From: Heteronotia binoei | Lineage: Eukaryota | DNA: 64,000 nt | Assembly (NCBI RefSeq): GCF_032191835.1 | Contig: NC_083240.1 | Span: 248,001 to 312,000, forward strand | Direction of reading: 5' to 3' | Shown: in pieces, positions 3,269-40,000 of the stretch | Position numbering within the stretch: the stretch's first letter is position 1 | Layout: every line of letters begins with the position of its first letter | The notes under the pieces: model-generated | Told to the model about the DNA's origin: nothing | What the model saw: only the letters and a program-made list of their open reading frames with translations | Databases searched by the model: none | Position numbers and translations under genes: made by a program

Positions 3269-11842
<8,574 letters not shown>

Positions 11843-15882: not shown

Positions 15883-16014
15883 TCAGACGGACGCGATGAC
15901 AATCATGAGGTGAGGCGAGATGTTGGAGATGCTGGCGAGGAGGTCTGGGGCGAGGCGAGAGAGGTGGCTCTCTGAGAACTCGCAGGGTGGGAAGATCTGC
16001 AGGACGTAAGCGGG
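15883..16014 (-). CDS. SPEN: SPEN exon 15 coding part (SPOC end, stop)
   Basis: ttccag|PAYVLQIFPPCEFSESHLSRLAPDLLASISNISPHLMIVIASV*. Confidence 0.98.
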   Translation of the reverse strand, partial: PAYVLQIFPPCEFSESHLSRLAPDLLASISNISPHLMIVIASV

Positions 16015-19000
16015 CTGGAAGGCAGAATCAGAGAGGGGACACTCAGCTGAGCAGCAGGTGGCCGAGATTCCGCCCCCCCCCCCGGCAAGTGGCTGCTCAC
16101 AGGAGGGTCCAGAACCACCCAGCAACGCAGCTGCCCAGAGAAAGAAGGGTCATGGCAGGCAATGCAAAGCCGGACAAGGCAGAGGGAGGATGGCCCAGCC
16201 CCCCCCCCCCCAGCCACAGAGCTGCTCTAGTCCAGCTGGGTCTTCTCGTGTTCAGATGCTGCCCACTCTTCCTCCCAAGGACCAGCTCCCATGGGTTTCC
16301 CAAGGGCTGACAAGGGCCACGGGGCTCATACCTGGTTGGAGCCGGGGTTGGGAACGTTGATGATGCCGGCGGCTTGTTTGGCCTGCAGGTAGCTGATGAA
16401 AGCAGCCTTCAGCGACTCCGTCTGGCTGACCACATCCTCTTGGTCTCGTCCGCAGGGCAGGGCCAGAAGCAGGCAATAGTCGCTCTCCACCTGGAGGACA
16501 ACAGGCCAGGTTACTGCAGCTGCTTTACACCTTTGGAGATGGGCTGGCCCTGACCACACAGAACAAAGCTTTCGGCAAGGGCTGAGCGGGAAGAGCCAGC
16601 ATGATCCATGGAGCCCAGACACAAAGTGGCAGGCACTGAAGCTAAGCCCTTTCAAGCACCACAGAGTGAGACCACCAAAGGTGCTCCCCCCCTCATGACC
16701 CTGCCTAAGAACTCAGCACTGCCCCCCGGCTGAATACCAAAGCCTTCTCCACTGCGGCCCCCTGCTTATGGAATGACCTCACACTCCTTGACTTGGTTTG
16801 CCCTGCTGCTGTTGCCAGAGAACCAAGAACCACAGGCTGCCCCACTCCCCCAGCAAACGGAGAAAAACACCATGTACGAGAACAGTGATTACTGCATGGT
16901 TACTTTCACTCAGGTATACTCATTCAATCACAATGCAAATTAGAAGTGTGCATATATCTAACAACACACTAAAGAGTCATAATTCCAGTCTCTGCCGCAC
17001 CGTAGGGCTTCTTGATTTTCACCGGAAGGGTCTGGTACCTAAGAGATAAATGGATAAAAGCCCGGCTTGAAAATTCTTCATGGCTCATATGCAAACATCT
17101 TAGGTGTGATAACATGCATCCCATGTTAAAAATTCTGCATGTTTCAAGAGAATCCCTTCTTCTGGCCACCGTTTCAGATTGGAACACTGCTCAACAGTTT
17201 CTTCAACATTAGCTCTGATGGGCTCAAGCCTCAGCTGATCTGACATGGCTAGCTCTGCCTGGGACAGCTGCAGTTTTCACTCAAGAAAGGGAGACTTCAT
17301 GGTGTCATTTCCTTGCTTCCCTCTCAGTTTCTCTGCAGCAGGCTGGTCAATCACGTTCCCTTCCTTCTCCTTGACTCGAGTCAACACTACACATGGCATC
17401 AGTTCGAGGCGGTTCTTAGCTGGCCCTTCTTTTTCAGTTCTCTCCCTGCTCTGCTTACTGCTGCCTTTTAACCTCTCTGGACTGGGCTCTCTCTCATTTT
17501 CTTGGTCTGTCTCAGAAGACTGAGAGCTGGGAGAATGAATTTTGGCTTTTCGTTTTTGCTTGTCCATTTTATCTTTTTCATGTTTTTCAGTTTCATCTTT
17601 CCTAACCAGCCACTTGTCAAACCAAATGTGTAGGCAGTATAGTTCTCAATGAGAATAATCAAAGCAAGAATCACACTCAAGAAACTGCTGAGCAGTGTTC
17701 CAATTTGAATTGAAGGGTGGCCAGAAGGGATTCTCTTGAAACATGCAGGATTTTTAACCTGGGATGCACGATGTCACACCTAAGATGTTTGCATATACGC
17801 CACTGAGGAATTTTCAGGCCAGATTTTATCCATCTATCTCTTGTGCATCAGACCTTTCTGGTGAAAATCAAGCAGCTCTATGGTGCGGCAGAGACTGGGA
17901 TTGTGACTCTTTAGTGTGTTGTTAGATAAATGTGTGCTTGTTACTTGTATTGTGAACGAATGAGTATACCTCAGTGAAAGTAACTTTTTGCAGTAACCAG
18001 TGTTCTAGTACATGGTGTTCTTGCTCCATTTTGCTCAACCTGCACATCGTGTTGTTTCCTGTTTTGTTGCCTCCCCCCAACCAAAGCGGGGCTGGCAAGA
18101 GCAAGACTCCCACTCACCATCATTCTGCGGGCCACACCCTCCAGCTGGGATGCTTCCAGCCTCATGCGCTGGGCGATGCGCAAGGGAGGCCCCCCTTCTG
18201 GGGCAGGCAGGGAGCGATGTGCCAAGACATTGTTGCCGGAGACAAAGTGCAACTGGACTGCCGCAGTGTCATTCTTCAAGGCCAGGAGCCCCTGCCACAC
18301 AATCGGGTACTTCTGCAAACGTGGGACAGGGAGGAAGGCGTGAGGGCCAAGAGCCACGACCACAGAGGCAGGGAGGGAGGATGCCACCACAAACACAGAC
18401 ATCTGCCAGAGGAGGAAAGGGGCACCCCAAAGAGGCAGAACAGAGTGTGCAGCCACACACACAACCCAGTCACTGGCTGGCCCTGCCTTGCCCCTCCTTT
18501 GCTTTCCTCCCCACCACACTCAAAACAAGGAAGGAGGCAGACGCCACAGCAAGAGTTACCGTCAGCAGCTGGACCATGTCCACAGGCCTTTGAGAAACAG
18601 GGTCCGGTTTGAGTGCTGACTGAGCTTCCGGGCGGGAGAGTGACAGTCCTGGAGGGCACCCGGTGGTGGTGGGGATGAAGAGGGCTGCTTTCTGCACCAC
18701 CTGCGTCTGGTGTGGGGAAGGGAGCTCCTGCTTCACAGAAATGGCGACGGGAGAAGGATAGGAGGTTGGGCCCGCCTCTGCCGGGGCTCTCGGAAGGTGC
18801 ACGTGCGCCTCCATCTGTGAGACATGCCGGCTGACGGCTGAGTGGTGCGTCAGGTCAGGCCCTGGAGCCTGAGCCCCCTTTGGCTCCTGGGAGAGTTGCG
18901 GCGTTTTGCTGCGAGCCGGCTGACTTGGGTGCGAATGCTCCCCTTCTGGCAGGCCCTGAGAGGCACAAGAGGAAGCAGAACAGTTAGGGTGAGGCAAGGC

Positions 19001-22000: not shown

Positions 22001-25000
22001 TCTGAGACTCTTCGGAGTGGAGGGCGGGATATAAATCCAATATCTTCTTCTTCAAGAGTCATGGAGTAAAAGGACAGGTCCTCTTGTGGATCAAAAACTG
22101 GCTAATTAATAGGAAGCAGAGAGTGAGTATAAATGGACAGTCTTTGCAGTGGAGGACGGTAAGCAGTGGGGTGCCGCAGGGCTCAGTACTGGGTTCCATG
22201 CTCTTCAACTTGTTCATAAATGATTTGGAGTTGGGAGTGAGCAGTGAAGTGGCCAAGTTTGCAGATGACACTAAATTGTTCAGGGTGGTGAGAACCAGAG
22301 AGGATTGTGAGGAACTCCAAAGGGATCTGTTGAGGCTGGGTGAGTGGGCGTCAACATGGCAGATGAGATTCAATGTGGACAAGAGCAAAATAATGCACAT
22401 TGGGGCCAAGAATCCCAGCTACAAATACAAGTTGATGGGGTGTGAACTGGCAGAGACTGACCAAGAGAGAGATCTTGGGGTCATGGTAGATAACTCGCTG
22501 AAAATGTCAAGACAGTGTGCAATTGCAATAAAAAAGGCCAACGCCATGCTGGGAATTATTAGGAAGGGAATTGAAAACAAATCAGCCAGTATCATAATGC
22601 CCCTGTATAAATCGATGGTGCAGTCTCATTTAGAATACTGTGTGAAATTCTGGTCACCGCACCTCAAAAAGGATATTATAGCATTGGGAAAAGTGCAGAA
22701 AAGAGCAACTAGAATGATTAAAGGGTTGGAACACTTTCCCTATGAAGAAAGGTTAAAACGCTTGGGGCTCTTTAGCTTGGAGAAACGTCGACTGTGGGGT
22801 GACATGATAGAGGTTTACAAGATAATGCATGGGATGGAGAAAGGAGAGAAAGAAATACTTTTCTCCCTTTCTCACAATACAAGAACTCGTGAGCATTCGA
22901 TGAAATTGCTGAGCAGTCGGGTTAAAATGGATAAAAGGAAGTACTTCTTCACCCAAAGGGTGATTAACATGTGGAATTCACTGCCACAAGAGATGGTGGA
23001 TGGCTACAAGCATAGCCAGCTTCAAAAGGGGGTTAGATAAAAATATGGAGCAGAGGTCCATCATTAGCCACAGTGTGTATATATATATGTGTGTTGTCTG
23101 TGTGTGTGTATATATATATATATATAATTTTTTTGGCCACTGTGTGACACAGAGTGTTGGACTGGATGGGCCATTGGCCTGATCCAACATGGCTTCTCTT
23201 ATGTTCTTATGTACGTAAGCCCTCTTTAGATACGATGTCCACATGAGCTGAGAGTACCCGCCAACCATGTGCCTTGGAAGCTTGCAGTCCCCCGTGATGT
23301 TCACAGGCAACAAGGATTCTTCATCAGGTTCGACTTCCCATGTATGGAAGCTGTAAGCGCATGGAAACCCCACACACTGCCAGCTCACATCATTCCAGAT
23401 ACATGCTGATGATGGATTCCCAGCTGATGATGAATTCCCAGCTCTTGACAGTCTGCTTCTCTTTCTGAATGGCAGGCCTCGCTTCCATCAACCCCACGCA
23501 GCGGCCCAAGGCTGGCAAGCGCTGCTAGCCCCTCCCCACTCTTCCTGCCCAGTCAACGTGACTCAGCCCTGCCTTCTGAGCACACAGACCCCCTCCCTCC
23601 CCCCCAAACCAAGAGCCGCTTTGGAGGCACCTCGGTGGCAAGAGGAGGAGGGAACCAGAGAGGATTGTGAGGCACGCCAAACGGATTTGTCAAGGCTGGG
23701 TGAGTGGGCGTCAGCACGGCAAATGAGGTTCAACATGACCAAGTGCAAAGTAATGCACAATGGGGCCAAAAATGCTAACTATAAATACAAATTGATGGGG
23801 TATGAACTGGTGGACACTGACCAAGAGAGAGATCTTGGGGTCATGGTAGATAACTCATTGAAAATGTCAAAACAGTGTGCAATTGAAATAAAAAAAAAGC
23901 CAACGTCATGTTGGGAATTATTAGGAAGGGAATTGAAAACAAACCAGCCAGTGTCATAATGCCCCTGTATAAATCGATGGTGCAGCCTCATTTGGAGTAC
24001 TGTGTGCAATTCTGGTCACCACACCTCGAAAAAGATATTATAGCATTGGATAAAGTGCAGAAAAGAGCAACTAGAATGATTAAAGGGCTGGAGCACTTTC
24101 CCTATGATGAAAGGATAAAACGCTTGGGGCTCTTTAGCTTGGAGAAACGTCGACTGTGGGGTGACATGATGGAGGTTTACAAGATTATGCATGAGATAGA
24201 GAAGGTAGAGAAAGAAGTACTTTTCTCCCTTTCTCACAATATGAGAAGTCGTGGTCATTCAATGAAATTGCCGAGCAGTTGGGATAGAATGGATAAAAGG
24301 AAGTCCTTCTTCACCCAAAAGGTGATTAATATATGGAATTCACTGCCACAGGAAGTGGTGGCGGCTGCAAGCATATACAGCTTCAAGAGTGGATTGGATA
24401 AACATATGGAGCAGAGGTCCATCAGTGGCTATTAGCCACAGCGTACTGTTGGAACTCTCTGTCTGGGGCAGTGATGCTCTGTATTCTTGGTGCTTGGGAG
24501 GGCTTCTAGTGTCCTGGCCCCACTGCTAGACCTCCTGATGTCACCTGGTTTTTTTGGCCAGTGGGACACAGAGTTGTTGGACTGGATGGGCCATTGACCT
24601 GATCCAACATGGCTTCTCTTATGTTCTTATGTCTGGGGCAGTGATGCTCTGTATTCTTGGTGCTTGGGGGGGAACACAGTGGGAGGGCTTAGGGCTTATA
24701 GCGTCCTTTCCCCACTGATGGAACTCCTAATTGCACTTGGGTTTTTTGGCCACTGTGTGACACAGAGTGATGGACTGGATGGGCCACTGGTCTGATCCAA
24801 CATGGCTTCTCTGTGTTCTCCTGATGGCTGCCCTCTCCCTCAACCCGCCCACAGGGGGAGATATGAAAACTCAGCTCCGCAGTGCAGGAGTCCCCCCTCA
24901 TGTCCTCACCTGGGAGGGGGTCATGCTCCGGGAAGGCAGCCCCATGGAGGGAGCCCCTGAGAAGGAAGGCGGGCCAAGCTGAGCGGCTGGGTGATAGCTC

Positions 25001-28000
25001 CGGATGTCGCCGTACACCGTGCGGTAGTCATGGAAAGAGCTCCCGGCAGGATGCATGATCTGGACGCCGTGCGGCACCACCACTGGCTGGGTCAGAGGCA
25101 AGCCGGGCAGCTGGCCGCTGAGGAGGCGCCCCTCGCTGTGTGGAGAGTGAGCCAGTTTGACTTCCGAAGACTTGGGGGTCTCTTTGCCCGACTGGAGGGT
25201 CTTGGGGGCAGGCGGCGTCTTGACCGATCCCCCTTCCGGTGTTCTGGACTGCCGAGTCTCTGGGTGATGCTCGCTGCCCACTGCTGCCATGTGCGGGTGC
25301 ATCATCATCCTCACATCTCGGGGCACGTTGTACTGGTCCAGCCGAATGCCGGTCGGGTGCATGCGGAAGTCTGGCTGCATGACCAGCACGTCTGACTGCA
25401 CGGGAGCTGACCCCCGGCAGACGGTGTGGTGGTAGTGCATCTCCTCTTCTGGGGCATGCTGGGAAGGCAGAGGCGGCATGACGATCTCTCTGACCGAAGC
25501 CGGCTGAGGCGTGCTGGACCGCGGAGGCTGCAGAGCTGCCCGGGGAGAGTGGAGCGCTTCGGAGCGGATGCTGTAGGGCATGCCAGGCAGCGGGGGGGTG
25601 TTCATTCTCACTTCCCCTTGGGCGAGATGGCCCAGGGACACGGTCTGGGTGACGCTGTGGGGAGGCATGATGACAGACTGCTCCGGGTGCATGCTGGAGA
25701 TGTACTGAGGCACAGGGATGCCCGGGCAAGGAGACCCCTGAATCCCCAACATGACCGAGGCGGGCGAAGAGGGCCCCCCAGGGTGGCAGGCCCTTGGAAA
25801 CGGCGAAGGAGAATGCCCGCTCGCCCGAGGGGACAGGGGCTCCTGCTTCGAGACGCCCAAGTGAGGAACTGCCCGGTCGGCTGGGGTGCCGGGCCCCACG
25901 CTCACGTGGTTGGCGTCTGCGTGCATCTTGCCAGACATGGCGGGGTGGTGAGGGCCGACGCCAGGGCTCAGGCTTGAAGGCTGCAGGGCCTTGGACTCCA
26001 CCTTCATGGCCGTTGGGTCTGGAAGCTTCTTGTTGCTGGAAGCCATGCTCTGGGAGAGCACCATCTGGCTGTGGACCAGGATGGGTGGAGTGTTGCTGGG
26101 CTGGGAGAGGACCTTCACTGGGCCTGGCTGGGAAGCAGGTGCCAAGGGGGGAAGGTGCATGCCTTCGGACTTCTCCAAGCTGCCACGCTCTTGTTTAATG
26201 GAGGAGAGCACCGGGGAAGAGCCATACTGCTGAGTGCCCAGCACCAGGGCCGCAGGGGCAGCAGTGCTCCCATATCCCACTGAGGCCTGAGAGGCCTTGG
26301 GGGTTGGCTGGCCCGGCCCAAGAGGCTCCTGCTTTATTTGGGTCTTGGAGACGGACTGCTGGAACTCAATGTCCACAGCGCTTGCTGGAGGGATCTGGCT
26401 GATCTTGGCACTGATCCTCTGTGGCCCTTCCGTCTTCTGTCCCGAGTAGCTCAGCAGCACCACCCCTTCTGACGTGTTGACACGAAGGCCCGGGCTGGAG
26501 CCGCTCTCAGCTGGCCGGTCCTCAATAACGGGCATGGAGCCGGGGTGGAAGCGGCTCTCATCGTTGGCACTCAGCCTCTGCTTGTGCTTCAGAGGAAGGG
26601 AGCTGATGAGGCACGATGCTTGCGGTGGGGGCACTGGCTTCACCAGGGTGGCTCGGGGGGCTTCCTCCAGATCAATACTGGGGGGCATCCTGCTGATCAC
26701 AGACGTGGCCTTGGGAGCAACGACCGTCATGATCTTCTCCTTCTCCGTGAAGACTGGGGCCTCAGCAGCAGGGGGGTCCAAAGCATTTGGGGCAGGAACG
26801 GCTGGGTTCTCCTCTGTTCCTGGCCTCACCGCCTCTGTGGGGGGGTGAGGCGGCACCTCTTCCACACGAGGGGCGCTCACCGGTTCAACGATAGCCGTTG
26901 TGACGTGTGTAGACGCAATGCTGGTTGCAGACACATACTTGGGCTCCATCAGGATTTTCCGCAAGGTACTGGAATTGGTGTCGATATCGGAGGCCTTTGT
27001 ATCTGGGGGAAGAGCAGGAGGAGGGGTGGAGCGTGCCCGGGGCTCCTCGTGCTTCACAATCCATTCTGTCACCTTCGCTGGACTGGAGTGGAGGGGAACC
27101 AGCCCGGCAGAGACAGGGGTGACCAGCTTAGCTACAGCGGCTGAAGGAACGGCTGCCCCAGACGGGCTCAGGGCTCTTGGCGGCAGAGTTACAGCAGCAC
27201 TTTCGGCAGCTGAGTGCAGCTTCAGCCCCATTTGGCTCCCATCTTCGACAGGAAGTGGCAGAGGCAGCGGATTCCGTGGATCTGGAGGTTTGGGCAGGGG
27301 GCCACTTTCTGTCGCAAGCTCCTCCCGGGATGGAGTCTGGCTGCTGTTTGGAACGGTGGGTTCAGGGGAAGCCAGAGAAGAGCTTGGGCTGGGTTTGCCA
27401 TCTTTCGTGTCGTCTTCTGGTTTCCCTTTCACTTCATTGGCAACAGGGGATTTGCCTGCCACGCTTTCAGAATCAACGGCCCTCAGTTCGGCAGCATCTC
27501 CTTTTTTGCTTGCACTCCGCTTCCTCCTCGGCCGAGCGGTCTTCTGGCGGCCCCTTTCTTTCCGAGACCCATCAGTCTCCTGCGGGATTTCTGCTTCCTG
27601 TGCTGAGCCGGAAGACTCGCTGCTTAAACTCACTTCAGCCTCCTTGCTGGGGGCTGGGGGAGCAGGTGGGGCTGGGGGAGCAGGTGGCTCAGCTGCAGCT
27701 GCTGGATCCAAAATGTTGCTAACTGCCTGGTCTGTTTCCGGCTCCATGTCCTCTCGTGCAGCTGGCAGCACTAATGGTTCTGCAGGCATCTCAGGTTCCG
27801 ATTCCGCAGGATATGGTGGGGGAGCAGGGAAGCTTTCTGCCTCCACAGAAATGTCATTCATGATGGAGCCAATGGCTGCAGCCAGTTCTGTTTCGCTTGC
27901 CTGATGAGCAGGCTTGTCTCCTTCTTCTTCCTGGCGGACCTCAGCTACATCTGCTGCTTGCTCCTTATAGGCTGCAAGAGTTGGGCCTTCTGTGAGCTTG

Positions 28001-31000
28001 GCAATATTCTCCACTGCTTGTTCCAGTTCTATCTGCTTGGCCAACTGGACCGCTTCAGGCAACTGCGCTGGCTCACAGGGGGTGTCCTGACCTGTGTGCT
28101 GAAAGGCATCTTCTGCCTCACTCTTTGGGAAATGGGCAGGCAACTTGTCTTCCTTCGGGGGACTTTTGTTTCTGGGCGAGGATGGCAGGGGCTCCATCTC
28201 CTCTTCACTTGGCCGCAGAGCGCCTCTGACCTCATCCACATTGAGACGGATTTCGACACTTTTCAGGCTCTTAATCAAGGATGCTTTGTCAACAGCCTTG
28301 ATGTTTCGAGATCTTCCCCTCTTGGACTTGGTCATCCTCTCTGGGGGAGGTTTTCTTTCTACAATCTCAGTTGGGCAGGCTTCAGGAGGGCTTTTGTCCA
28401 AGTCAATGTCTTTCCTTTCTCGCTTCTGTTCACCAGCAGTGATTTCTTTGTCTGCCTTGATCTTGCTGCCATTTTCTCCTGCATTTGAACCATGGCCAGG
28501 TAGTTCAGATGGCTCTTCGGGATCTGCTGAGATCTCTACTTTTGGTTCTGCTCGGCCTTTCTTTCCTTGCTGACCAGGGGTAGCCGACAAATGGCTGTGT
28601 AGTAGCTTCTGGGATCTAGGGGATCTCCAGCCTTCCACAGGTTTAGGGGTTTCCACTACTTCTTTTGTTTCCATTTCTTCTGCTTCCAGCTGTACTGGCT
28701 CTGTCTTGATGGGAGAGACCTCCTCCTCAGGTTTGTGACGTGACTTTCGAGGTCGGCCTCTTTTGGGAGGAGTAGGGACAACTGTGGTCTCGGGGAGCTC
28801 TCTTTCAGCTCTTTTCCTGGTAGACCTGGTCAGCTCCACAGGATCCTTCACAGGCGAGGGACCTTCGTGGTCTCCTGGGGTAGCATAAACTGACCTGACG
28901 TTTCTGCGCCTTGTTCGGCTGATGGGCAAACTTGGCTCTGGGTTGTCTGGCTCTGCTGCTGCTGCTGCACTTGGGGATTTCGCTGCATTCTTCAAAGTCT
29001 TCTCTGCTTCTCCTTTCAACTCAAGAAGCTTCTGCGCCTCCCCACGGGGAGAGCCGGATCTTTTAAGTTTTTCACGGTCAATCCTTTCACTCTTCCTCGT
29101 GATAGGTTTATCAGTAATGTTTGCAAGAGCAGACTGGACAGGGGTTTTGGACCGCTTGTTCTTGCAAGGCCGTTTGTCTTTCACAACAACTGGAGGTTCA
29201 GTTTCCACCTCTGTGTCAGAAACTGCTGCTGGGATAACCTCAGCCCCGCCCTCTGCTTTCTGACTTGCAACAGGTTCTGGTCCAGGGGCCACGGAGACAT
29301 TGTCTTCTTTGGGTTCCAAGGGCTCCTCAGACACCGTGGCCAATAGTGGAGGGGCTGCAACTGCTTCTGGGTCTGTGCCAATATCTGTTTGGGAAAAAGA
29401 GGATCCAGGTGTAGGTGGCTTTGCATCCAAATACAAAGGGTTCTCCACAGAGACGGAGTCCTCCTCATGACCTGCAGTAGAAGGAGCAGCTTCTTCTGCA
29501 GCTGAAGGGGCTTCAAGAGGTGGCTCAGGCAGTTCCGCTTTCAAAGGAGCCACAAGCTCTGGAAGAGGCTCTTCTGCTTCAGGAGGCCTTTCTTCTCTAG
29601 AACAGGGCAGCTCAGCTGGTACTTTCTCACTTGTGGCCTTCTCTGGCTCTTGAAAGGCCAGGGCCACTGGCAACGGACCTCCTCCTAACACGGGAGACTG
29701 CTGCTCAGGCTCTTTCTTCTCAGGCACTGTCACCTCAGGTGTTTTGGGGCAGTTCTCCTTCTCTTCCTGCTTTTCAGCTTCTCTGGGTTTCTTGTCCTTT
29801 TCTTTCTCCTTCTGCTGCATGCGAGTGAGTTCCACGAACCTACTATGGAAGAGAACCACTGGCTCCTGCACCAAGACATCTGCGATGCTGTTGGTTCCAT
29901 CCAGAGAAGACTGTCTACCATACGGTCTACCAGAAAGGAAGTCCAGGTCTTCATCTTTCCTTTCCAAATGCTGCAAGCGTTTTGAGTCTTGTTCAAAGAT
30001 TGAGCTGTGTAAGAATCGTGAAGCAAACAACTCCTGCCTCTCTTGCTCCTCCTCTTTATGATCCTCTTTCTTATCGTCCAATTTCCCTTCAGAGTCAGTT
30101 TTAATTTTCTTCTTTTTCATATACCATGGCGGGATGGGCCTTGGAGTAGAATCCACTTTCTCTTTGTCCTTGTTGTTTCTAAAACTAGCAAATCTTGAGT
30201 CCCAGTCAAGAAATGACCAGTTTTCTTCCCTGGATGAGGAGAGAGACTTGGCTCTCTCCAGCAAGGCTTTTGTATCAGGCGTGATGGTTTTATCCAGCGC
30301 AAAAGAATAGAATTTGTTCCTCTCTAAGGAGATTGGCAGCCTTTCCTCCCTCTCACGTAGCTTTTCTTCCCTGTCCCTTAATAAAAAAGACAAGCGGGAG
30401 CTCTCCAGCAACACAGAGGCCTTGGGAGACCGGGCCTTGCTGTCGCCATCTTCATCAGAGTCTGAAGGCACCTCTCCTGGCTCCAGGTCTCGAATTGACC
30501 GTTTCCGAAGGCTGTCTCTTTTGATGGTGCTGCTAGGGAAGTTAATATCCACTCGGCCAGTCTCCAGTTTCAGGGGAGGCTCCCACCGGTTGGATTCCTC
30601 CTCGAAATTCAGGGAAGAGAGTTTTATTTTGGCCATTTCTGCCATCTGTTCTCTTTGACTGGAATCACAGAGATTAAGCTTCAGAGAATCCTCTCTAGCG
30701 GTCATATTAGAACATACAGGGCCCTTTTCATCTATTTTTGGTGATTCTTTGGCTTCTTTTAAAGGCATCAGCCTTGGGGAATCCAGCACCTCTTCCTCCT
30801 CATGGAAAGGAAAAGGTTTGAGGCTTGGAGAACAAGCAGTTCTCTCAGAATCTTCACTCACTTGGCGAGAGCTTCGATAGTTTCTCTCCCTCTTAGTGCT
30901 AATTTCAAAATCAAATGTGTCAGATGACTTCTTACGCTTACTGGGGGGAGAGTCATCAGTCACGTCTTGAGGGGGCTTCCCCACCTCATGAACCAGGCTA

Positions 31001-34000
31001 CGCCTTTCATACTCATCTAGGTCTTTCTTTGGACTGCCAAACTTCTCAGACTTTGCTATTTCCATTTCCATTTGCTGCTTTAATCTGCGACTTTGCTCCA
31101 TTTGTTTCCGATAACTCTGTGTATGATCAATGTCAATAGGAATTTTCTCCTCCATATCCGACGACAGGGGCTTCACTTGGACGTGTCTGTGGTCAGGCAT
31201 TTCCTCTGGAAGACTGCAGTAGTTCTTCCGTACATCGTCTCTCTCTGCTCCTTGATCACCTAACAGCTGGGGGTGTCTGTGCTGCAGCTTCACTGAACTG
31301 AACTTCCTTGAAGAAGGGATCTCAAGGGCTTCCACAAGCTCATCGACTGGCTCTCCCAGCCTGGCCTGCAGCTCTAAACTGGGCCGCAAACCAACAGCTG
31401 CAGAAATGCTTGCAGGCTCCGAAGTATCTTTGGGACTGGCAACAGGAAATAGTCTTTCCACCTTTATTTTCTTAGAATCCCTTTTCAATGTTTCTTTCCT
31501 CAAGGACTTCCGTTCAGATTCCACTGACACATCAGGCTGCTTTTTCAAAACCACGCGTGCCGCCACTGCCGCCTCCTCCTCCTCCTGAAAAATTCTTTTG
31601 GTTTCCATTTTTTGCCTCTCGGGCTTCAGGTTTACATCTGCAAAGCGCCTTTTGCGAGCCTCCAACTTTTCCAGGTCAACTGGGTTTGTAACTTCACTCA
31701 GTTGTTCTGCTTTCATGTGTTTCTTGGGCTTGAGTTTCCCGTCCTTATCAACTACTTCAACATGGCTGGCAAGGATCTTTTCCTTTGGCACCTTCGCTCT
31801 GATGGGCTCCAGCCTCAGCTGCTCTGACTTGGCTAGCTCTGCCTGAAACACCTGCAGCTTTGGCTCCAGCAAGGGAGACTTCATGGTGTCATTTTCTTGC
31901 TTCCCTCTCAGTTTCTCCATAGCCAGCTGGTCAATCACTTTCCCTTCCTTCTCCTTGACTCGAGTCAACACTACACATGGCATCAGTTCGAGGCGGTTCT
32001 TAGCTGGCCCTTCTTTTTCAGTTCTCTCCCTGCTCTGCTTACTACTGCCTTTTAACCTCTCTGGACTGGGCTCTCTCTCATTTTCTTGGTCTGTCTCAGA
32101 AGACTGAGAGCTGGGAGAATGAATTTTGGCTTTTCGTTTCTGTTTGTCCATTTTATCTTTTTCAAGTTTTTCTGTTTTATCTTTCCTAACCAGCCGCTTG
32201 TCTTTGTCAGGTCTCTCTTGCTCAAAGGCTCTCTCTTTTTCTGCCTTCTCCACTTTTGCATAGCGCTCCAGACGGGCTTTGTCCAGCTTTTCATAGCGTG
32301 GTGGAGAAAGTGAGCTGCAGCTACCACTTCGCTCTGAAGACCTGCTGTAAATCCTCCTCTCAGAGTCACTCTGAAGTCTCTCGGACTGTGACGGAGATGC
32401 TCCTGGGCTTTGGGGCCGACGGGAATGAGGACTCTGACTCCGCTCAATAGGCCTCCTTTCATGGTCCCGGTCAGTTTCGAATCGCTCCCGCTCCCGCTGC
32501 CTGTAACTGTATTCCCTGATGTCTTGTTCGTAAGGGTCACCTCTGTAATCTCTGTATTCCCGCGGGTCATCATAGTAGCGTGGGTCATAATAGTCTCCCT
32601 GGTAAGGATCCCAGTCTGCATAGAATTCCCGACCACGAGCTGGATACTCTCTTCGAGGATCTTCAGGATATGTCCCTGGTGTCCTCACGGCCTCATAGTA
32701 AGTGCGGTCAGCAGCATAGTCATAAGATCCTCTTCTTTCGTCTCTGCCAAAACCAAGGACACCAAGAAATTAGCTGGCTCCCAACTGAAGGTCACCACAT
32801 ACAGCAATAGTCAGGTTAATTAAAGCAAGCATCACTCAGAGCCATTTTCTGTGTAGCAAGAGCTTCTCCTAAACTGATCTGACACCGCGCACTTTCAGGA
32901 AGCTCTGAAGAGCTACTCTAGGGGCATCCTTCCTCTCATGTGTCCTTTTTTTGGTGGGGGGGAGAGGAGTGCTCATATGATGTGCTCACTGAAATCACAT
33001 AGAAGAAGAAGATGATATTGGATTTATATCCCCCCGCCCTCCACTCCGAAGAGTCTCAGAGTGGCTCACAATCTCCTTTCCCTTCTCCCCCACAACAGAC
33101 ACCCTGTGAGGTAGAAGAAGATATTGGATTTATATCCCGCCCTCCACTCCGAAGAGTCTCAGAGCGGCTCACAATCTCCTTTCCCTTCCTTCCCCACAAC
33201 AGACACCCTGTGAGGTGGGTGGGGCTGGAGAGGGCTCTCACAGCAGCTGCCCTTTCAAGGACAACCTCTGCCAGAGCTATGGCTGACCCAAGGCCATTCC
33301 AGCAGGTGCAAGTGGAGGAGTAGGGAAAACCCAGTTCTCCCAGATAAGAGTCCACACACTTAACCACTACACCAAACTGGCAAGCAAGAAACAAGGAGGA
33401 GCTGAGATTACTTGGTTCCCCTTGAGAACGGTGTTGGGAAAAGGCAAGGCTGATTCCATCTGAGGAACCCTCTTCTGGTGTGTTAGAGGAAGCAGCCCCT
33501 ATCTGCCAAAACCTTGCCACTAAAGGTATGGCACTGGCCAAATGAATATTTAAAAAGGGGAAACTGAGTGGCAATAATGGGGAAACAATCCAGTTCAGTC
33601 TCTAAATGAGTTGGGCATTAGTGGGCCAACACCCAACTCTCATCTTTAAATGGCAGCCTCCCCCCCACACCAGGCCTTCATAGGCAGCAGAGCTCAGACA
33701 CCAGGAGGGAGGCAAAGAGCACACCATCAAGACACTTCTGGTTTTTCTCAGGCCCATTTTAAGAAATCTAAATTACATTATACAAAATGATACTGAGTGA
33801 TACTTGAAGACCCCTCTCCTATATAGTGATTGAACAGTCCATATGCTACAAACTGCCTTCCCTATGTATGTTCAATATTTATATTATAGATGGGGTGCCA
33901 CTAATACCGGCCCCTAAGGTCAAGAGCTTGGGAGTGCTCCCGGGGTTTTCTGTGAACAATCAGCACAGTCAACAACCATCTTCCTTATCTTCAAACCCCT

Positions 34001-37000: not shown

Positions 37001-40000
37001 CCGCCTTTCTCTGCATATTCCCCAGAGAGCACTGTGTTCAGGAACACAAAATCTATTGTCTATCCCCGGACCAAAGTAAGCCAGGCTATGCTCCACTCGG
37101 GTTAGGGCTTTTTCAGTGGCGGCACCAGAAATGTTGAATGCCCTCCCAGAGGCCATAAGGGCCCTGCGGGATCTTTCACAATTCCGCAGGGCCTGTAAAA
37201 CTGAACTGTTTCAACAGGCCTTCAGTACCTGAATCCGGGAGAGAACCACCACCTCCCACTGCTGAGGAGCTACAAATATCATGGAATCATCAACAGAAAA
37301 AGAAAGATCCCACCATATCAAAATGTATAGCACCACAAAATGTTTTAAACGTATGTTACTGGTTTTAAGTTGTTTTACATAATTGTTAGCTGCCCTGAGT
37401 CCGCTTGCGGGAGAGGGTGGGATTTAAATAATATAAATAAAGTAATAAAGTAATAAATAAATAAATAAATAAATATCACAATCATTGCTCTTAAGGTGAT
37501 CTGCCTCACAGGTAAACCAAACGTGTGTGCCAAACAGTGTGGCCTGAGTTTTACTCATCTGTCTCAGGATTTATTTTTTTAANNNNNNNNNNNNNNNNNN
37601 NNNNNNNNNNNNNNNNNNNNNNNNNNNNNNNNNNNNNNNNNNNNNNNNNNNNNNNNNNNNNNNNNNNNNNNNNNNNNNNNNNNNNNNNNNNNNNNNNNNN
37701 NNNNNNNNNNNNNNNNNNNNNNNNNNNNNNNNNNNNNNNNNNNNNNNNNNNNNNNNNNNNNNNNNNNNNNNNNNNNNNNNNNNNNNNNNNNNNNNNNNNN
37801 NNNNNNNNNNNNNNNNNNNNNNNNNNNNNNNNNNNNNNNNNNNNNNNNNNNNNNNNNNNNNNNNNNNNNNNNNNNNNNNNNNNNNNNNNNACACACTACT
37901 GTTGTGAGCTCCGTTCGGCTTGGGCAGGGTGGAAAGAACACTTGCCTTCTCTCTGCCAGCATCTCATAGAAGTCTCGGATATCCTGGCCCGTTTTCTCCA
38001 TGGATTGGTAGAATGCCAACTGACTCTCTCGATTGGCAAAATCCACCTGAAAAAGCAGTTCAAGGTCAGTCTTTGGAAGAGTTGCCTCCTGGGTCAGCCA
38101 CAGCACCAGGAAGCCAACCCTGCCTGGGGACTGCAGGCTGCAGCAGTCATGGGCAACACACACAAGCAAAAGAAACAAGGGGGGGGGGGTCTGACACCTC
38201 CAGATCCCACACACTTGACTCCTACTGGCTGGCTGCATGCAGGCTCTCCCTAGGTGATGCCTCCCATCTGGCAGGAAGGGAAATGTGCCCCCCAGGGGCC
38301 ACCCAGCCTGTCCCCCCATTGCAAAGCAAGGCCACTTCCTTCCTCTGAGGCAATGGCCATTCCACCGAGGGAAAAGCATGTCCCACAGCTGATGCTGGGA
38401 AAAGGAGGCACACAGCAGATTCGCCTGCACCCCCATGGGCCTCTGGGCAGGACGGCTGCCCCTGCCCACCTTGAGAGAGACTGGCAGCTAAGCCCTGCAG
38501 CCCAGAGACCTCCAAGGGGGAAACGGAGCCAAGCTGGCAGCACAACCAGGGAGGCCCAGAAGGAACAGCTGAGGAGGAGGCCAAAGAGCAATTTACAATG
38601 ACAACAACAACAACAGTGATGATAATCCAGCCCTTGGGGGGGGGCCCACTAAGCTATTTATTTATTCAGCTCTTTCAGTTTTTCCAGACCTTGATCTTAT
38701 TTCCACCTATCTTCCTCCCCTTGGTCTCTTTTACAGCTGCTTGTGCATATTCTATCTCATTATAGAGAATTAGAGCCATGCCTTTCAAGCGGTCAAACAC
38801 CACCTGTAAAAAAAGCAAAAACAAAAAACGCATAAGAGCCTCATCCACAGGAGTGCCCGCCCACCCTTCTGCCAGGGGAGGGCTGGATGGGAGATGGATG
38901 CAGCATGGTGGAAGGAAAGGCCTTCTGCTTTCCGCCAATAAGGCATCTCTGAGGAGGGGAGGGGAGGGGAGGGGAGGGGAGGGGAAAGGAGGGGAGGGAG
39001 ATAGGAGGGGACGGGAGGGAGAGAGGAAGGGAGAGGAGAGGCAATCGAATGGGACAGGAGGGCCTGCTCTGGACTGCAGAGAGAGGTGCTGCTGCTGCTG
39101 CTGCTGATTCCAACTCTGGTTAGCAAACGCTGCTGCTCCCTACATCTCATCTGTCTCAAATTAATTTTAGGGGTTTTTTTGGGCTATGAGGGTTTGTAAC
39201 TCTGGCAGGAGGCACACAGCCTGCCAGGAAGTTCCACCGTCATTCCCCACAGGGCTTCCGCATGGCCTGCAGCGCTCATCTGCCAGACCCCAAGGGTGGG
39301 CTGCAGGCTAATGACCTGCTGGGGCGAAGGTCAGGCAAGAGCAAGGCGGGTGGGTGGGACAGGCCTCTCTTGCATGCTGCACATCCCACCACATCCAGAA
39401 CGCGAGCCAGGCATCACCTTCCACACCGAGCATGGCTACAACCCCTACAGCTGGAGCTGGTGCCCCCCCCTCCAATTTCAAAGTAGCTATGAAAAGCCAG
39501 AATACAACTTGGGCATTCACTGCTCAGTTTGGCTAGGCTCAGTTCTTTCGCAAACCCAGAAGCTGGAGTAGGAGTGTGGCGCCCTCAAAGGGCAGTGCCA
39601 ACCCAGAGGTGGACTGAGAGCTTGAGGCAGCAAGGCTGCCGAGAAAGGAAGGAAGGAAGGAAGCCAGGAAAGCATCAGGCTAAGAGGCAAGCCTCCCACC
39701 TACCTTGACCACAGGCCCGTAGCGGCAGAAATGGCGATTCAAATACTGGTCCGTTACGTTGGTCGAAAGACCATCTAGCCACACGCAGTTGGTGGGCATG
39801 CTCTTCCCAAAGCCCAGCTGGATGGATGCAAAAGGGCAAAAAGCGCATCAGTAGAGAAGCCCCCAAAGTCCAGGAGACTTTACAAGCAACACATCTGGGG
39901 CAGAGGCCAGCAAGTCATAAGCAGTCTTGTCTTTACAAGTGCTCAAAACCTCATAATAGGGTCCAAATATTTTTGTTTGAAGAGCTTAGGTAGAAAGCGC

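What the first reader, a model, noticed from the sequence alone, without database searches (positions are those of the whole stretch)
16852..18035. SPEN intron 13 carries a piece of SPEN's own giant exon enclosed by long inverted repeats (self-capture cassette)
Seen: arms 16852-17203 and 17679-18035 are reverse complements (~355 bp, ~85% identical by hand). The 475-bp spacer contains a 407-bp ungapped copy (17212-17618) of exon 11 positions 31796-32202, in the same orientation and 14.6 kb away, plus ~60 nt of unique sequence. Established: TIR elements carrying host gene fragments (Pack-MULE/Pack-TIR type) and replicative template switching (FoSTeS/MMBIR) both produce such mosaics. Inference: this is either a Pack-TIR-like element that captured a fragment of the gene it sits in, or a two-switch templated insertion (exon 11 piece plus an inverted copy of the local intron). 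No TSD was found, which favours template switching. None of the ordinary features explains the structure.
Basis: partly seen in the sequence, partly recalled or inferred. Interest (0 to 1): 0.85.

Follow-up and report, generated by a model that had tools for sequence, protein, structure and literature searches.

The report
Transposon that captured SPEN exon piece
A 1.2-kb inverted-repeat mobile element sits in intron 13 of a gecko's SPEN gene and carries a 413-bp copy of that gene's giant exon; this matches a class already described in animals ("Pack-TIR"), so it is a clean example, not a new kind of thing.

Summary
The arms 16852-17203 and 17679-18035 are reverse complements (BLAST E 2e-104). 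The stretch 17206-17618 is an ungapped, same-sense, 93.5% identical copy of SPEN exon 11 (31790-32202), 14.6 kb away.

- **Insertion.** The unit is 1,219 bp (16852-18070). Four other geckos (Gekko japonicus, G. kuhli, Paroedura picta, Eublepharis macularius) lack it entirely, so the arms are not copied local intron.
- **Repeat family.** Whole-genome reads pile about 10-20-fold on the arms and drop to baseline at 18070. The arms therefore belong to a low-copy dispersed repeat.
- **Capture.** Four reads from one run show other family members joining the arm directly to the "unique" spacer, without the exon piece. The piece sits at that point with 1-6 nt and 3 nt of microhomology, and at most 2 nt of element sequence were lost.
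- **Target-site duplication.** A 7-8 bp flanking repeat (CTCCCCC) exists but lies in a variable G-run.
- **Gene conversion.** The central 200 bp of the copy was later overwritten from the exon.

Best reading (about 0.6): a single-copy Pack-TIR formed by microhomology-guided gap filling in cis, the class described by Tan et al. 2021. It is a new member of a known kind, of modest interest.

The parts
16845..16851 (.). Left copy of the candidate target-site duplication, CTCCCCC. Read as 8 bp it is 16845-16852, CTCCCCCA.
   Evidence: Empty-site alignment with four geckos. The site is a variable G/C run, so the duplication is suggestive only.
16852..17203 (+). Left arm of the inverted repeat (long terminal inverted repeat of the element).
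   Evidence: Family reads map here. No Pfam hit in its ORFs.
17206..17618 (-). Captured copy of SPEN exon 11, in the sense of the gene, carrying one in-frame stop codon. The junction zones are 17206-17211 and 17616-17618.
17356..17555 (-). Gene-conversion tract inside the copy. It has 1 difference from the exon in 200 bp, against 26 in the 213 bp of flanks.
   Evidence: (none of 5,000 permutations reached the observed value).
17616..17678 (+). It is not palindromic apart from TTCTCA-A-TGAGAA at 17643-17655.
   Evidence: Four X7 reads join arm-end-like sequence directly to 17616 onward, and three reads diverge after 17649. Sequence read. Arm-end alignment.
17679..18035 (-). Right arm of the inverted repeat.
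   Evidence: It has the highest family read depth, 7-13x in X5 (5-10x in X6 and X7) against a baseline of about 0.5-1x.
18036..18070 (-). Extra terminal 35 nt of the insertion, a second degenerate tandem copy of the terminal motif of the arms.
   Evidence: Similarity to the arm termini has shuffle p of about 0.01-0.02. Family read depth continues to 18070 and then drops, and there are loose ends at 18070.
18071..18078 (.). Right copy of the candidate target-site duplication, CTCCCCC(C).
31790..32202 (-). Parental segment in SPEN exon 11.
18118..18318 (-). SPEN exon 13 (context). The donor GT is at 18117-18116, and the insertion starts 47 nt into intron 13.
16332..16496 (-). SPEN exon 14 (context).

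Best explanation
**What it is.** A non-autonomous DNA element of about 810 bp inserted into SPEN intron 13, 47 nt after the exon 13 donor. It has roughly 350-bp terminal inverted repeats and a short non-palindromic internal remnant. The insertion happened in the lineage of this gecko after it split from Gekko, Paroedura and Eublepharis.

**How the exon piece got in (inferred).** A break at the inner edge of the left arm, where the stem meets the loop of the potential hairpin, was repaired by DNA synthesis. That synthesis switched template, guided by microhomology, to exon 11 of the same gene 14.6 kb away in cis. It copied 407-413 bp and switched back. The result is a single-copy 'Pack-TIR' made by transposition-independent gap filling.

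**What happened since.** The arms, and the flanks of the copy, have drifted by about 13-14%. A recent gene conversion from the exon overwrote the central 200 bp of the copy.

**Shown versus inferred.** Shown: the insertion status, the repeat-family status of the arms, the anatomy of the junctions, and the mosaic identity of the copy. Inferred: the transposase-mediated origin, the order of events (insertion first, capture second), and the direction of the conversion.
For: - **Clean insertion.** The four orthologous introns lack all 1,219 bp.
- **Repeat family.** The arms attract about 10-20 times the baseline read depth. Most of those reads are under 90% alike, and 54-78% of what was laid runs on into sequence unlike the stretch (65-88% of reads lay only partly on it). 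High depth continues exactly to 18070, where reads diverge into heterogeneous sequence.
- **Both arms derive from the family.** At 18 of 26 sites where family reads disagree with one arm, the other arm carries the family letter. At 7 sites both arms share a private state.
- **Family members without the exon piece.** Four X7 reads join arm-end-like sequence to 17616 onward with no exon piece.
- **Junctions.** The right junction has GTC (3 nt) shared by element and exon. The left junction has an ambiguous zone of 1-6 nt. Only the element's 'GA' is missing.
- **Flanking repeat.** CTCCCCC flanks both ends.
- **Not a fold-back.** The loop halves are not reverse complements, so the right arm was not made by fold-back copying (sequence read).
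- **Single copy.** Depth over the exon piece is roughly two copies, and the diagnostic letters of the reads there match the parental exon.
- **Matching ages.** K2P distance is 0.144 between the arms and 0.134 for the copy flanks.
- **Known class.** Single-copy animal Pack-TIRs show a cis bias (56.9% within 15 kb), breakpoint microhomology (median 2 bp), small loss of element sequence (median 4.6%) and internal breakpoints (PMC8277862).
Against: - No transposase, no known terminal motif and no superfamily could be assigned.
- The TSD lies in a G-run that varies among geckos, and Eublepharis has tandem G5T units there, so it may be native sequence.
- The left end lacks the 35-nt outer motif present at the right end.
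- The sequence of family members without the exon piece rests on four reads from one run, at about 0.6x coverage.
- Reads clipped at 18029 and 18070 show some agreement in what follows 18070 (ACCMACCTG), so the family end could lie a few bases further out.
- No species with the element but without the exon piece was seen, so the order 'insertion, then capture' is not demonstrated.
- Coverage was too low for reads to confirm the assembly junctions.
Confidence: 0.6

Rival explanations
1. The break in intron 13 was repaired by a chain of templated insertions (MMBIR/FoSTeS or polymerase-theta type), and no transposition was involved. Segments were copied from a dispersed repeat elsewhere, then from exon 11, then from the repeat again in inverted orientation.
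For: Microhomology at both exon junctions. Equal age of arm divergence and copy-flank divergence. The TSD is uncertain. Both arms share 7 private states, as expected if one was copied from the other.
Against: The insertion boundary at 18070 coincides with where family homology ends. The arms are absent from all four orthologous introns. The loop is not a fold-back palindrome (sequence read). The model needs a trans template plus at least three switches, whereas the TIR-element model needs one insertion and one repair.
Confidence: 0.15
2. The element captured the exon piece while located elsewhere near exon 11, or during replication-fork switching, and then transposed as a unit into intron 13. 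This is local hopping, or the FoSTeST model of Tan et al.
For: Arm divergence and copy-flank divergence are the same. All outgroups lack both the element and the piece. Local reinsertion is common for cut-and-paste elements (established knowledge).
Against: Depth over the exon piece fits parent plus one copy, with no sign of further copies. According to PMC8277862, single-copy cases near the parent are mostly transposition-independent.
Confidence: 0.12
3. The arms are termini of a retroelement that inserts with inverted ends, such as a Penelope-like element. On this reading the exon piece is cDNA, made when the reverse transcriptase switched template onto SPEN RNA.
For: Other first-stage notes report inverted Penelope-like repeats in this genome (unchecked). 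A short terminal 'tail' resembling the end motif is present. The piece lies wholly within one exon, so an RNA origin cannot be excluded.
Against: No hammerhead ribozyme or any RNA family near its threshold in 16600-18300. No CTGANGA...GAAA core in the cassette. No reverse-transcriptase or endonuclease remnant.
Confidence: 0.08
4. The structure is an assembly chimera or a polishing artefact.
For: Read coverage (about 2x in total) was too low to confirm the junctions, and no reads with the copy's own diagnostic letters were seen at the flank positions checked.
Against: The repeated parts are 13-14% diverged with indels, the opposite of what collapsed or mis-joined identical repeats give. The copy keeps ancestral states that the parent has lost (12 sites), which no artefact would create.
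Confidence: 0.03

Closest known systems
Single-copy animal Pack-TIRs formed by transposition-independent gap filling (Tan et al. 2021, Nat Commun 12:4280, PMC8277862)
   Same: A TIR-bounded element with an internal host-gene fragment. The parental copy lies in cis within 15 kb. There is short microhomology at the breakpoints, almost no element sequence was lost, and the breakpoint is internal. It is single copy and intronic, in a position to form chimeric transcripts with its host.
   Different: The element's superfamily is unknown. The arms are unusually long (about 350 bp, nearly the whole element). The captured piece comes from a coding exon of the very gene that hosts the element, in sense orientation. 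A later exon-to-copy gene conversion is visible. No pre-capture state was observed.
Pack-MULEs, and Pack-type hAT or CACTA elements of plants
   Same: Long terminal inverted repeats enclosing gene fragments.
   Different: The plant elements are often multicopy, mobile, interchromosomal and carry 9-11 bp TSDs. Here there is one copy, next to its source, with a 7-8 bp candidate TSD.
Foldback elements (e.g. Drosophila FB4, the carrier of Ssk-FB4)
   Same: The element is almost entirely two long inverted arms, prone to breakage and template switching.
   Different: Foldback arms are built of tandem subrepeats. No direct-repeat family was found here, only a duplicated terminal motif.
Templated-sequence insertions at double-strand breaks, and FoSTeS/MMBIR rearrangements
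   Same: Microhomology-guided copying of a nearby segment into a break. This is the likely step that brought in the exon piece.
   Different: These mechanisms do not explain the dispersed-repeat arms or the coincidence of the insertion end with the family end.

Membership tests
Pack-TIR (Tan et al. 2021) | Terminal inverted repeats of a TIR transposon family at both ends | tested here: met
   The arms are 87% complementary. They belong to a dispersed repeat with about 10-25 arm equivalents. Which transposon superfamily it belongs to is not known.
Pack-TIR (Tan et al. 2021) | Internal non-element sequence with a parental copy elsewhere in the genome | tested here: met
   413 bp at 93.5% identity to exon 11. 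Four reads from other family members lack it.
Pack-TIR (Tan et al. 2021) | Target-site duplication flanking the element | tested here: inconclusive
   CTCCCCC appears on both sides (7 of 8 positions match if read as 8 bp), but the target is a variable G-run in the outgroups.
Pack-TIR (Tan et al. 2021) | Match to a consensus TIR transposon in a repeat library, with assignable superfamily | not testable with these tools
   No repeat library or genome-wide DNA search of this species was available. The arm ORFs have no Pfam hit.
Gap-filling origin (single-copy Pack-TIR) | Cis bias, microhomology at the breakpoints, small gap in the element | tested here: met
   The parent lies 14.6 kb away in cis. 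Microhomology is GTC (3 nt) at one junction and a 1-6 nt zone at the other. At most 2 nt of the element are missing.
Gap-filling origin (single-copy Pack-TIR) | Orthologous element without the captured piece in a related species (capture after insertion) | tested here: not met
   All four available geckos lack the element altogether, and no closer relative was available. This is uninformative and does not contradict the model.
   Neither arm occurs in the SPEN loci of G. japonicus, G. kuhli, P. picta or E. macularius.
Penelope-like element with inverted terminal repeats | Hammerhead ribozyme in the terminal repeat, and RT/GIY-YIG coding remnants | tested here: not met
   No hammerhead match at E up to 10. 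No core motif in the cassette. No Pfam hit.
Foldback element | Arms composed of tandem subrepeats | tested here: not met
   No direct-repeat family of 30 nt or more in 16000-19000. Only a duplicated terminal motif of about 25-35 nt.

The most novel reading that the evidence does not exclude
The intronic copy and exon 11 are in recombinational contact, as the 200-bp conversion tract shows. The cassette could then be more than a relic. Conversion in the reverse direction could feed neutrally accumulated variants, including a stop codon, into SPEN's coding exon. Separately, the 350-bp double-stranded RNA stem, which starts 82 nt after the exon 13 donor (the insertion itself 47 nt) and presents a sense exon fragment in its loop, could affect splicing, RNA editing or back-splicing of SPEN pre-mRNA.
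Probability: 0.08. Interest if true: 0.55.

Novelty: new member of a known kind. Interest (0 to 1): 0.32.

Why it matters
This is a well-resolved vertebrate example of how an inverted-repeat transposon picks up a piece of a nearby gene.
- The empty site is seen in four relatives.
- The family state without the captured piece is seen in reads.
- Both junctions carry microhomology.
- A later gene-conversion tract shows that the copy still exchanges sequence with its source exon.

The case supports the cis gap-filling model for animal Pack-TIRs in a group, squamates, that the main text of that survey does not mention. It does not reveal a new mechanism. Other unchecked first-stage notes report several more Pack-type captures in this genome, so a genome-wide survey might be worth more than this single locus.

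Tried and rejected
- **Arms copied from the local intron.** Rejected. They are absent from four orthologous introns and from the rest of the 64-kb window.
- **Right arm made by fold-back copying at the mini-palindrome at 17643-17655.** Rejected. The sequence beyond the 6-bp stems is not reverse-complementary (3 of 10 positions just beyond them; 12 of 29 across the two half-loops including the 6-bp stem, by eye on the sequence).
- **Penelope-like element with a hammerhead.** No support.
- **Coding remnant of a transposase or reverse transcriptase in the arms.** None found.
- **Conversion from the copy into the exon.** Disfavoured. The parental tract has only 3 lineage-specific changes per 200 bp, against an exon-wide mean of 5.7 with sd 2.6. 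About 12 would be expected if neutral copy sequence had been imported.
- **RNA evidence.** No RNA run was listed for 17619-18116, so expression, intron retention and editing could not be examined.
- **Junction confirmation from reads.** Not possible at about 0.6-0.9x per run.
- **Look-ups that returned nothing.** Exact-protein look-ups of P0003 and P0004 found no contig; other isoforms of those proteins worked. A search of earlier findings by arm sequence gave nothing.
Full report

Yes. The repeat finder and a BLASTN of 16701-18200 against the window recover the inverted repeat: 16855-17203 against 18031-17679, 84.0% over 357 columns with 12 gap positions, E 2e-104.

The same BLASTN finds only one other match in the 64 kb. 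17206-17618 equals 31790-32202 at 93.5%, 413 bp, ungapped, on the same strand, 14,584 bp away.

The source lies in a 2,596-codon ORF on the minus strand (24898-32688). Its C-terminal 697 residues are 89% identical to Gekko japonicus msx2-interacting protein (SPEN), 87% to Paroedura picta and 84% to Eublepharis macularius. The animal is therefore a gecko whose own protein is not in the database.

tblastn with the Gekko protein, plus inspection of the splice sites, gives these exons:
- exon 11: 32769-24910
- exon 12: 18979-18560
- exon 13: 18318-18118, with the donor GT at 18117-18116
- exon 14: 16496-16332
- exon 15: 16017-15886

The cassette is indeed in intron 13. The copy is in the sense of the gene and carries one in-frame stop codon.

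**2. It is an insertion, and its limits are 16852-18070.**

I fetched the SPEN loci of G. japonicus (L001), G. kuhli (L002), P. picta (L003) and E. macularius (L004). In all four, the sequences flanking the cassette are adjacent or nearly so. For example, L001 46355 and 46401 correspond to window 18110 and 16843. Neither arm occurs anywhere in those loci.

The multiple alignment of the empty sites (raw sequence) places the insertion between ...TTGGGGGGAG and GGGGGAGTGGGGCAGCCTGTGG... in gene orientation. On the plus strand the inserted block is 16852-18070 (1,219 bp), flanked by CTCCCCC at 16845-16851 and at 18071-18077. Read as 8 bp, the two sides are CTCCCCCA and CTCCCCCC.

This looks like a 7-8 bp target-site duplication. 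However, the target is a G-run of variable length in the other geckos: ten Gs in G. japonicus and (GGGGGT)3 in Eublepharis. I therefore call the duplication suggestive, not shown.

The block contains 35 nt (18036-18070) outside the right arm. These resemble the terminal ~25 nt of both arms (shuffle p of about 0.01-0.02), so the terminal motif is present twice in tandem at the right end.

**3. The arms belong to a dispersed repeat family.**

Three whole-genome runs carrying the same species label were laid on 16000-18900 with an 80% likeness threshold. About 1.1-1.9 Gb was read per run.
- **Baseline.** Flanking and exon bins have a depth of roughly 0.5-1 per run.
- **Arms.** Arm bins reach 7-13 in X5 and 5-10 in X6 and X7. 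Summing mirrored bins of the two arms gives about 14-18 in X5, or roughly 10-25 arm equivalents in the genome.
- **Read quality.** Most laid reads are under 90% alike, and 54-78% of what was laid runs on into sequence unlike the stretch (65-88% of reads lay only partly on it).
- **Right end.** High depth continues to 18070: 14 of 14 X5 reads at 18043 carry T where the window has C. Depth then falls to baseline. Reads show loose ends 'behind 18070' with low mutual agreement (0.55-0.66). Family homology therefore ends where the empty-site alignment puts the end of the insertion.
- **A caveat on the right end.** The first nine loose bases agree between runs (ACCMACCTG), so the family end could lie slightly further out.
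- **Clipping at 18029, 17170 and 17819.** The loose parts there are recognisably homologous to the window with indels. They reflect divergence, not different sequence.

Using the 'other letters' table, I checked 26 arm positions where family reads disagree with one arm. At 18 of them the other arm carries the family letter. At 7, both arms share a state not seen in the family. One has no mirrored base. Both arms therefore descend from one family-like ancestor sequence, and each has since acquired private changes.

**4. The exon piece is an addition to that element.**

Four X7 reads match the window from 17616 rightwards. Before that point they carry the consensus AACCACTGCTCAGCAATTTCATCAGCATGA with 0.95 agreement. 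This aligns with the inner end of the arm: 21 of 25 to 17185-17209, and 22 of 27 to the reverse complement of 17671-17697.

In the cassette the same place reads ...arm-CAT-[TAGCTC ... exon ... CTT]-GTCAAACC.
- **Right junction.** GTC (17616-17618) is shared by the exon and the element, giving 3 nt of exact microhomology.
- **Left junction.** Using the ancestral state of the exon from the outgroups, homology to the exon is certain from 17209 and possible from 17206. Homology to the element runs to 17209 and possibly to 17211. This leaves an ambiguous zone of 1-6 nt.
- **Loss.** Only the element's 'GA' is missing.

Three further X7 reads diverge from the window after 17649. This fits the cassette being an internally deleted derivative of a longer element.

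The loop is not a palindrome beyond TTCTCA-A-TGAGAA at 17643-17655. Only 12 of 29 positions match between the two half-loops, read. This argues against the right arm having been made by fold-back copying.

Depth over the exon piece averages about 2-3 in X5 and X7. At flank positions, the letters of the reads are exactly those of the parental exon (17262-17286, 17340 and 17355). There is no sign of further copies of the piece.

**5. Age and later history.**

Differences between the copy and the parent are not spread evenly. There are 26 in the 213 bp of flanks (17206-17355 and 17556-17618) and only 1 in the central 200 bp (17356-17555). None of 5,000 random placements gave a 200-bp window this empty.

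Polarising with the four outgroups gives 13 changes on the copy, 12 on the parent and 2 on both. Only two adjacent shared-derived sites fall in the flanks. The copy was therefore made early on this species' branch. In the flanks, copy, parent and Gekko are nearly equidistant (12.2%, 10.8% and 12.7%). On whole-exon informative sites, the window species, Gekko and Paroedura form a near trichotomy (65, 51 and 52 sites).

K2P distance is 0.144 between the arms, 0.134 in the copy flanks and 0.005 in the central tract. The arms were thus identical at about the time the piece was copied.

In the central tract the copy has no private change, where about 12 would be expected. The parent has 3 lineage-specific changes per 200 bp, within the exon-wide distribution (mean 5.7, sd 2.6). 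The simplest reading is a recent gene conversion of at most 200 bp from the exon into the intronic copy. The reverse direction should have loaded the exon with neutral changes, which is not seen.

**6. What it is and how it arose.**

The evidence fits a non-autonomous element with long terminal inverted repeats that inserted into intron 13 and then acquired a piece of exon 11 by template switching during repair of a break near its centre.

Tan et al. 2021 (PMC8277862) describe this class in animals. They found 370 Pack-TIRs in 100 genomes.
- Single-copy cases arise mostly by transposition-independent gap filling.
- 56.9% lie within 15 kb of the parental copy.
- 67.6% have microhomology (median 2 bp) at one or both breakpoints.
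- The gap in the element has a median of 4.6% of its length.
- Breakpoints are biased towards the interior of the element.

Every one of these features is met here.

What is not shown:
- the superfamily (a 7-8 bp TSD would fit hAT, P or Mutator-like elements, but the termini GCAA...TTGC match no motif I can name)
- the transposase-mediated origin itself
- the order of insertion and capture

Rival readings are scored in their own section: a pure chain of templated insertions, a mobile Pack element that hopped locally, a retroelement with inverted ends plus reverse-transcriptase template switching, and an assembly artefact. No hammerhead or other RNA family and no protein domain was found in the arms.

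**7. Consequences.**

Folded as pre-mRNA, the 1,219 nt give -600 kcal/mol, with the arms paired along their whole length. The stem begins 82 nt after the exon 13 donor (the inserted block itself 47 nt after it), and the exon piece sits in the loop. Pairing would bring the two ends of the insertion together. This may be why tripling the intron (about 400 nt in the other geckos, 1,621 nt here) has been tolerated. That is inference only.

No RNA run was listed, so expression, editing and exonisation are untested.

**8. Verdict.**

The structure is a new member of a known kind, of modest interest. The scan's first-stage notes list several other putative Pack-type captures by hAT and Tc-like elements in this genome (unchecked). 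A genome-wide survey may therefore be more informative than this single locus.

Noticed in passing
window 17356-17555 vs 31940-32139: A gene-conversion tract between exon 11 and its intronic copy: 1 difference in 200 bp against 12% in the flanks. The direction is most likely exon to copy.
   Followed up: yes
window 3595-8898 (+ strand): A BTB/POZ domain (ORF 3595-4290) and C2H2 zinc fingers (ORF 7981-8898) in a 58-70% GC region downstream of SPEN. This is probably a ZBTB17-like gene lying tail-to-tail with SPEN, as in the Paroedura locus L003.
   Followed up: partly
window 16742-16779: A 38-nt stretch of intron 13 outside the insertion attracts extra reads whose flanks agree with each other on both sides (agreement 0.81-0.91). 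All X5 and X6 reads at 16752, and 2 of 4 in X7, carry T. It is a short sequence repeated elsewhere in the genome, partly conserved in Paroedura and Eublepharis.
   Followed up: no
window 17307 / 31891: All 7 parent-type reads carry G where both the assembled copy and the parent have A. Most near-identical reads fall in the 95-99% likeness class. The sequenced sample probably differs from the assembled individual.
   Followed up: partly
window 31673-31970: A local excess of changes specific to this species' lineage in exon 11 (9-12 per 200 bp, against a mean of 5.7). It adjoins and overlaps the 3' flank of the copied segment.
   Followed up: no
window 37583-37890: A 308-nt run of N (assembly gap or masked stretch) in the intron just upstream of the giant exon.
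   Followed up: no
exon 11 alignment of the window with L001-L004: The window species, Gekko and Paroedura form a near trichotomy on SPEN exon 11: 65, 51 and 52 sites support the three possible pairings.
   Followed up: partly
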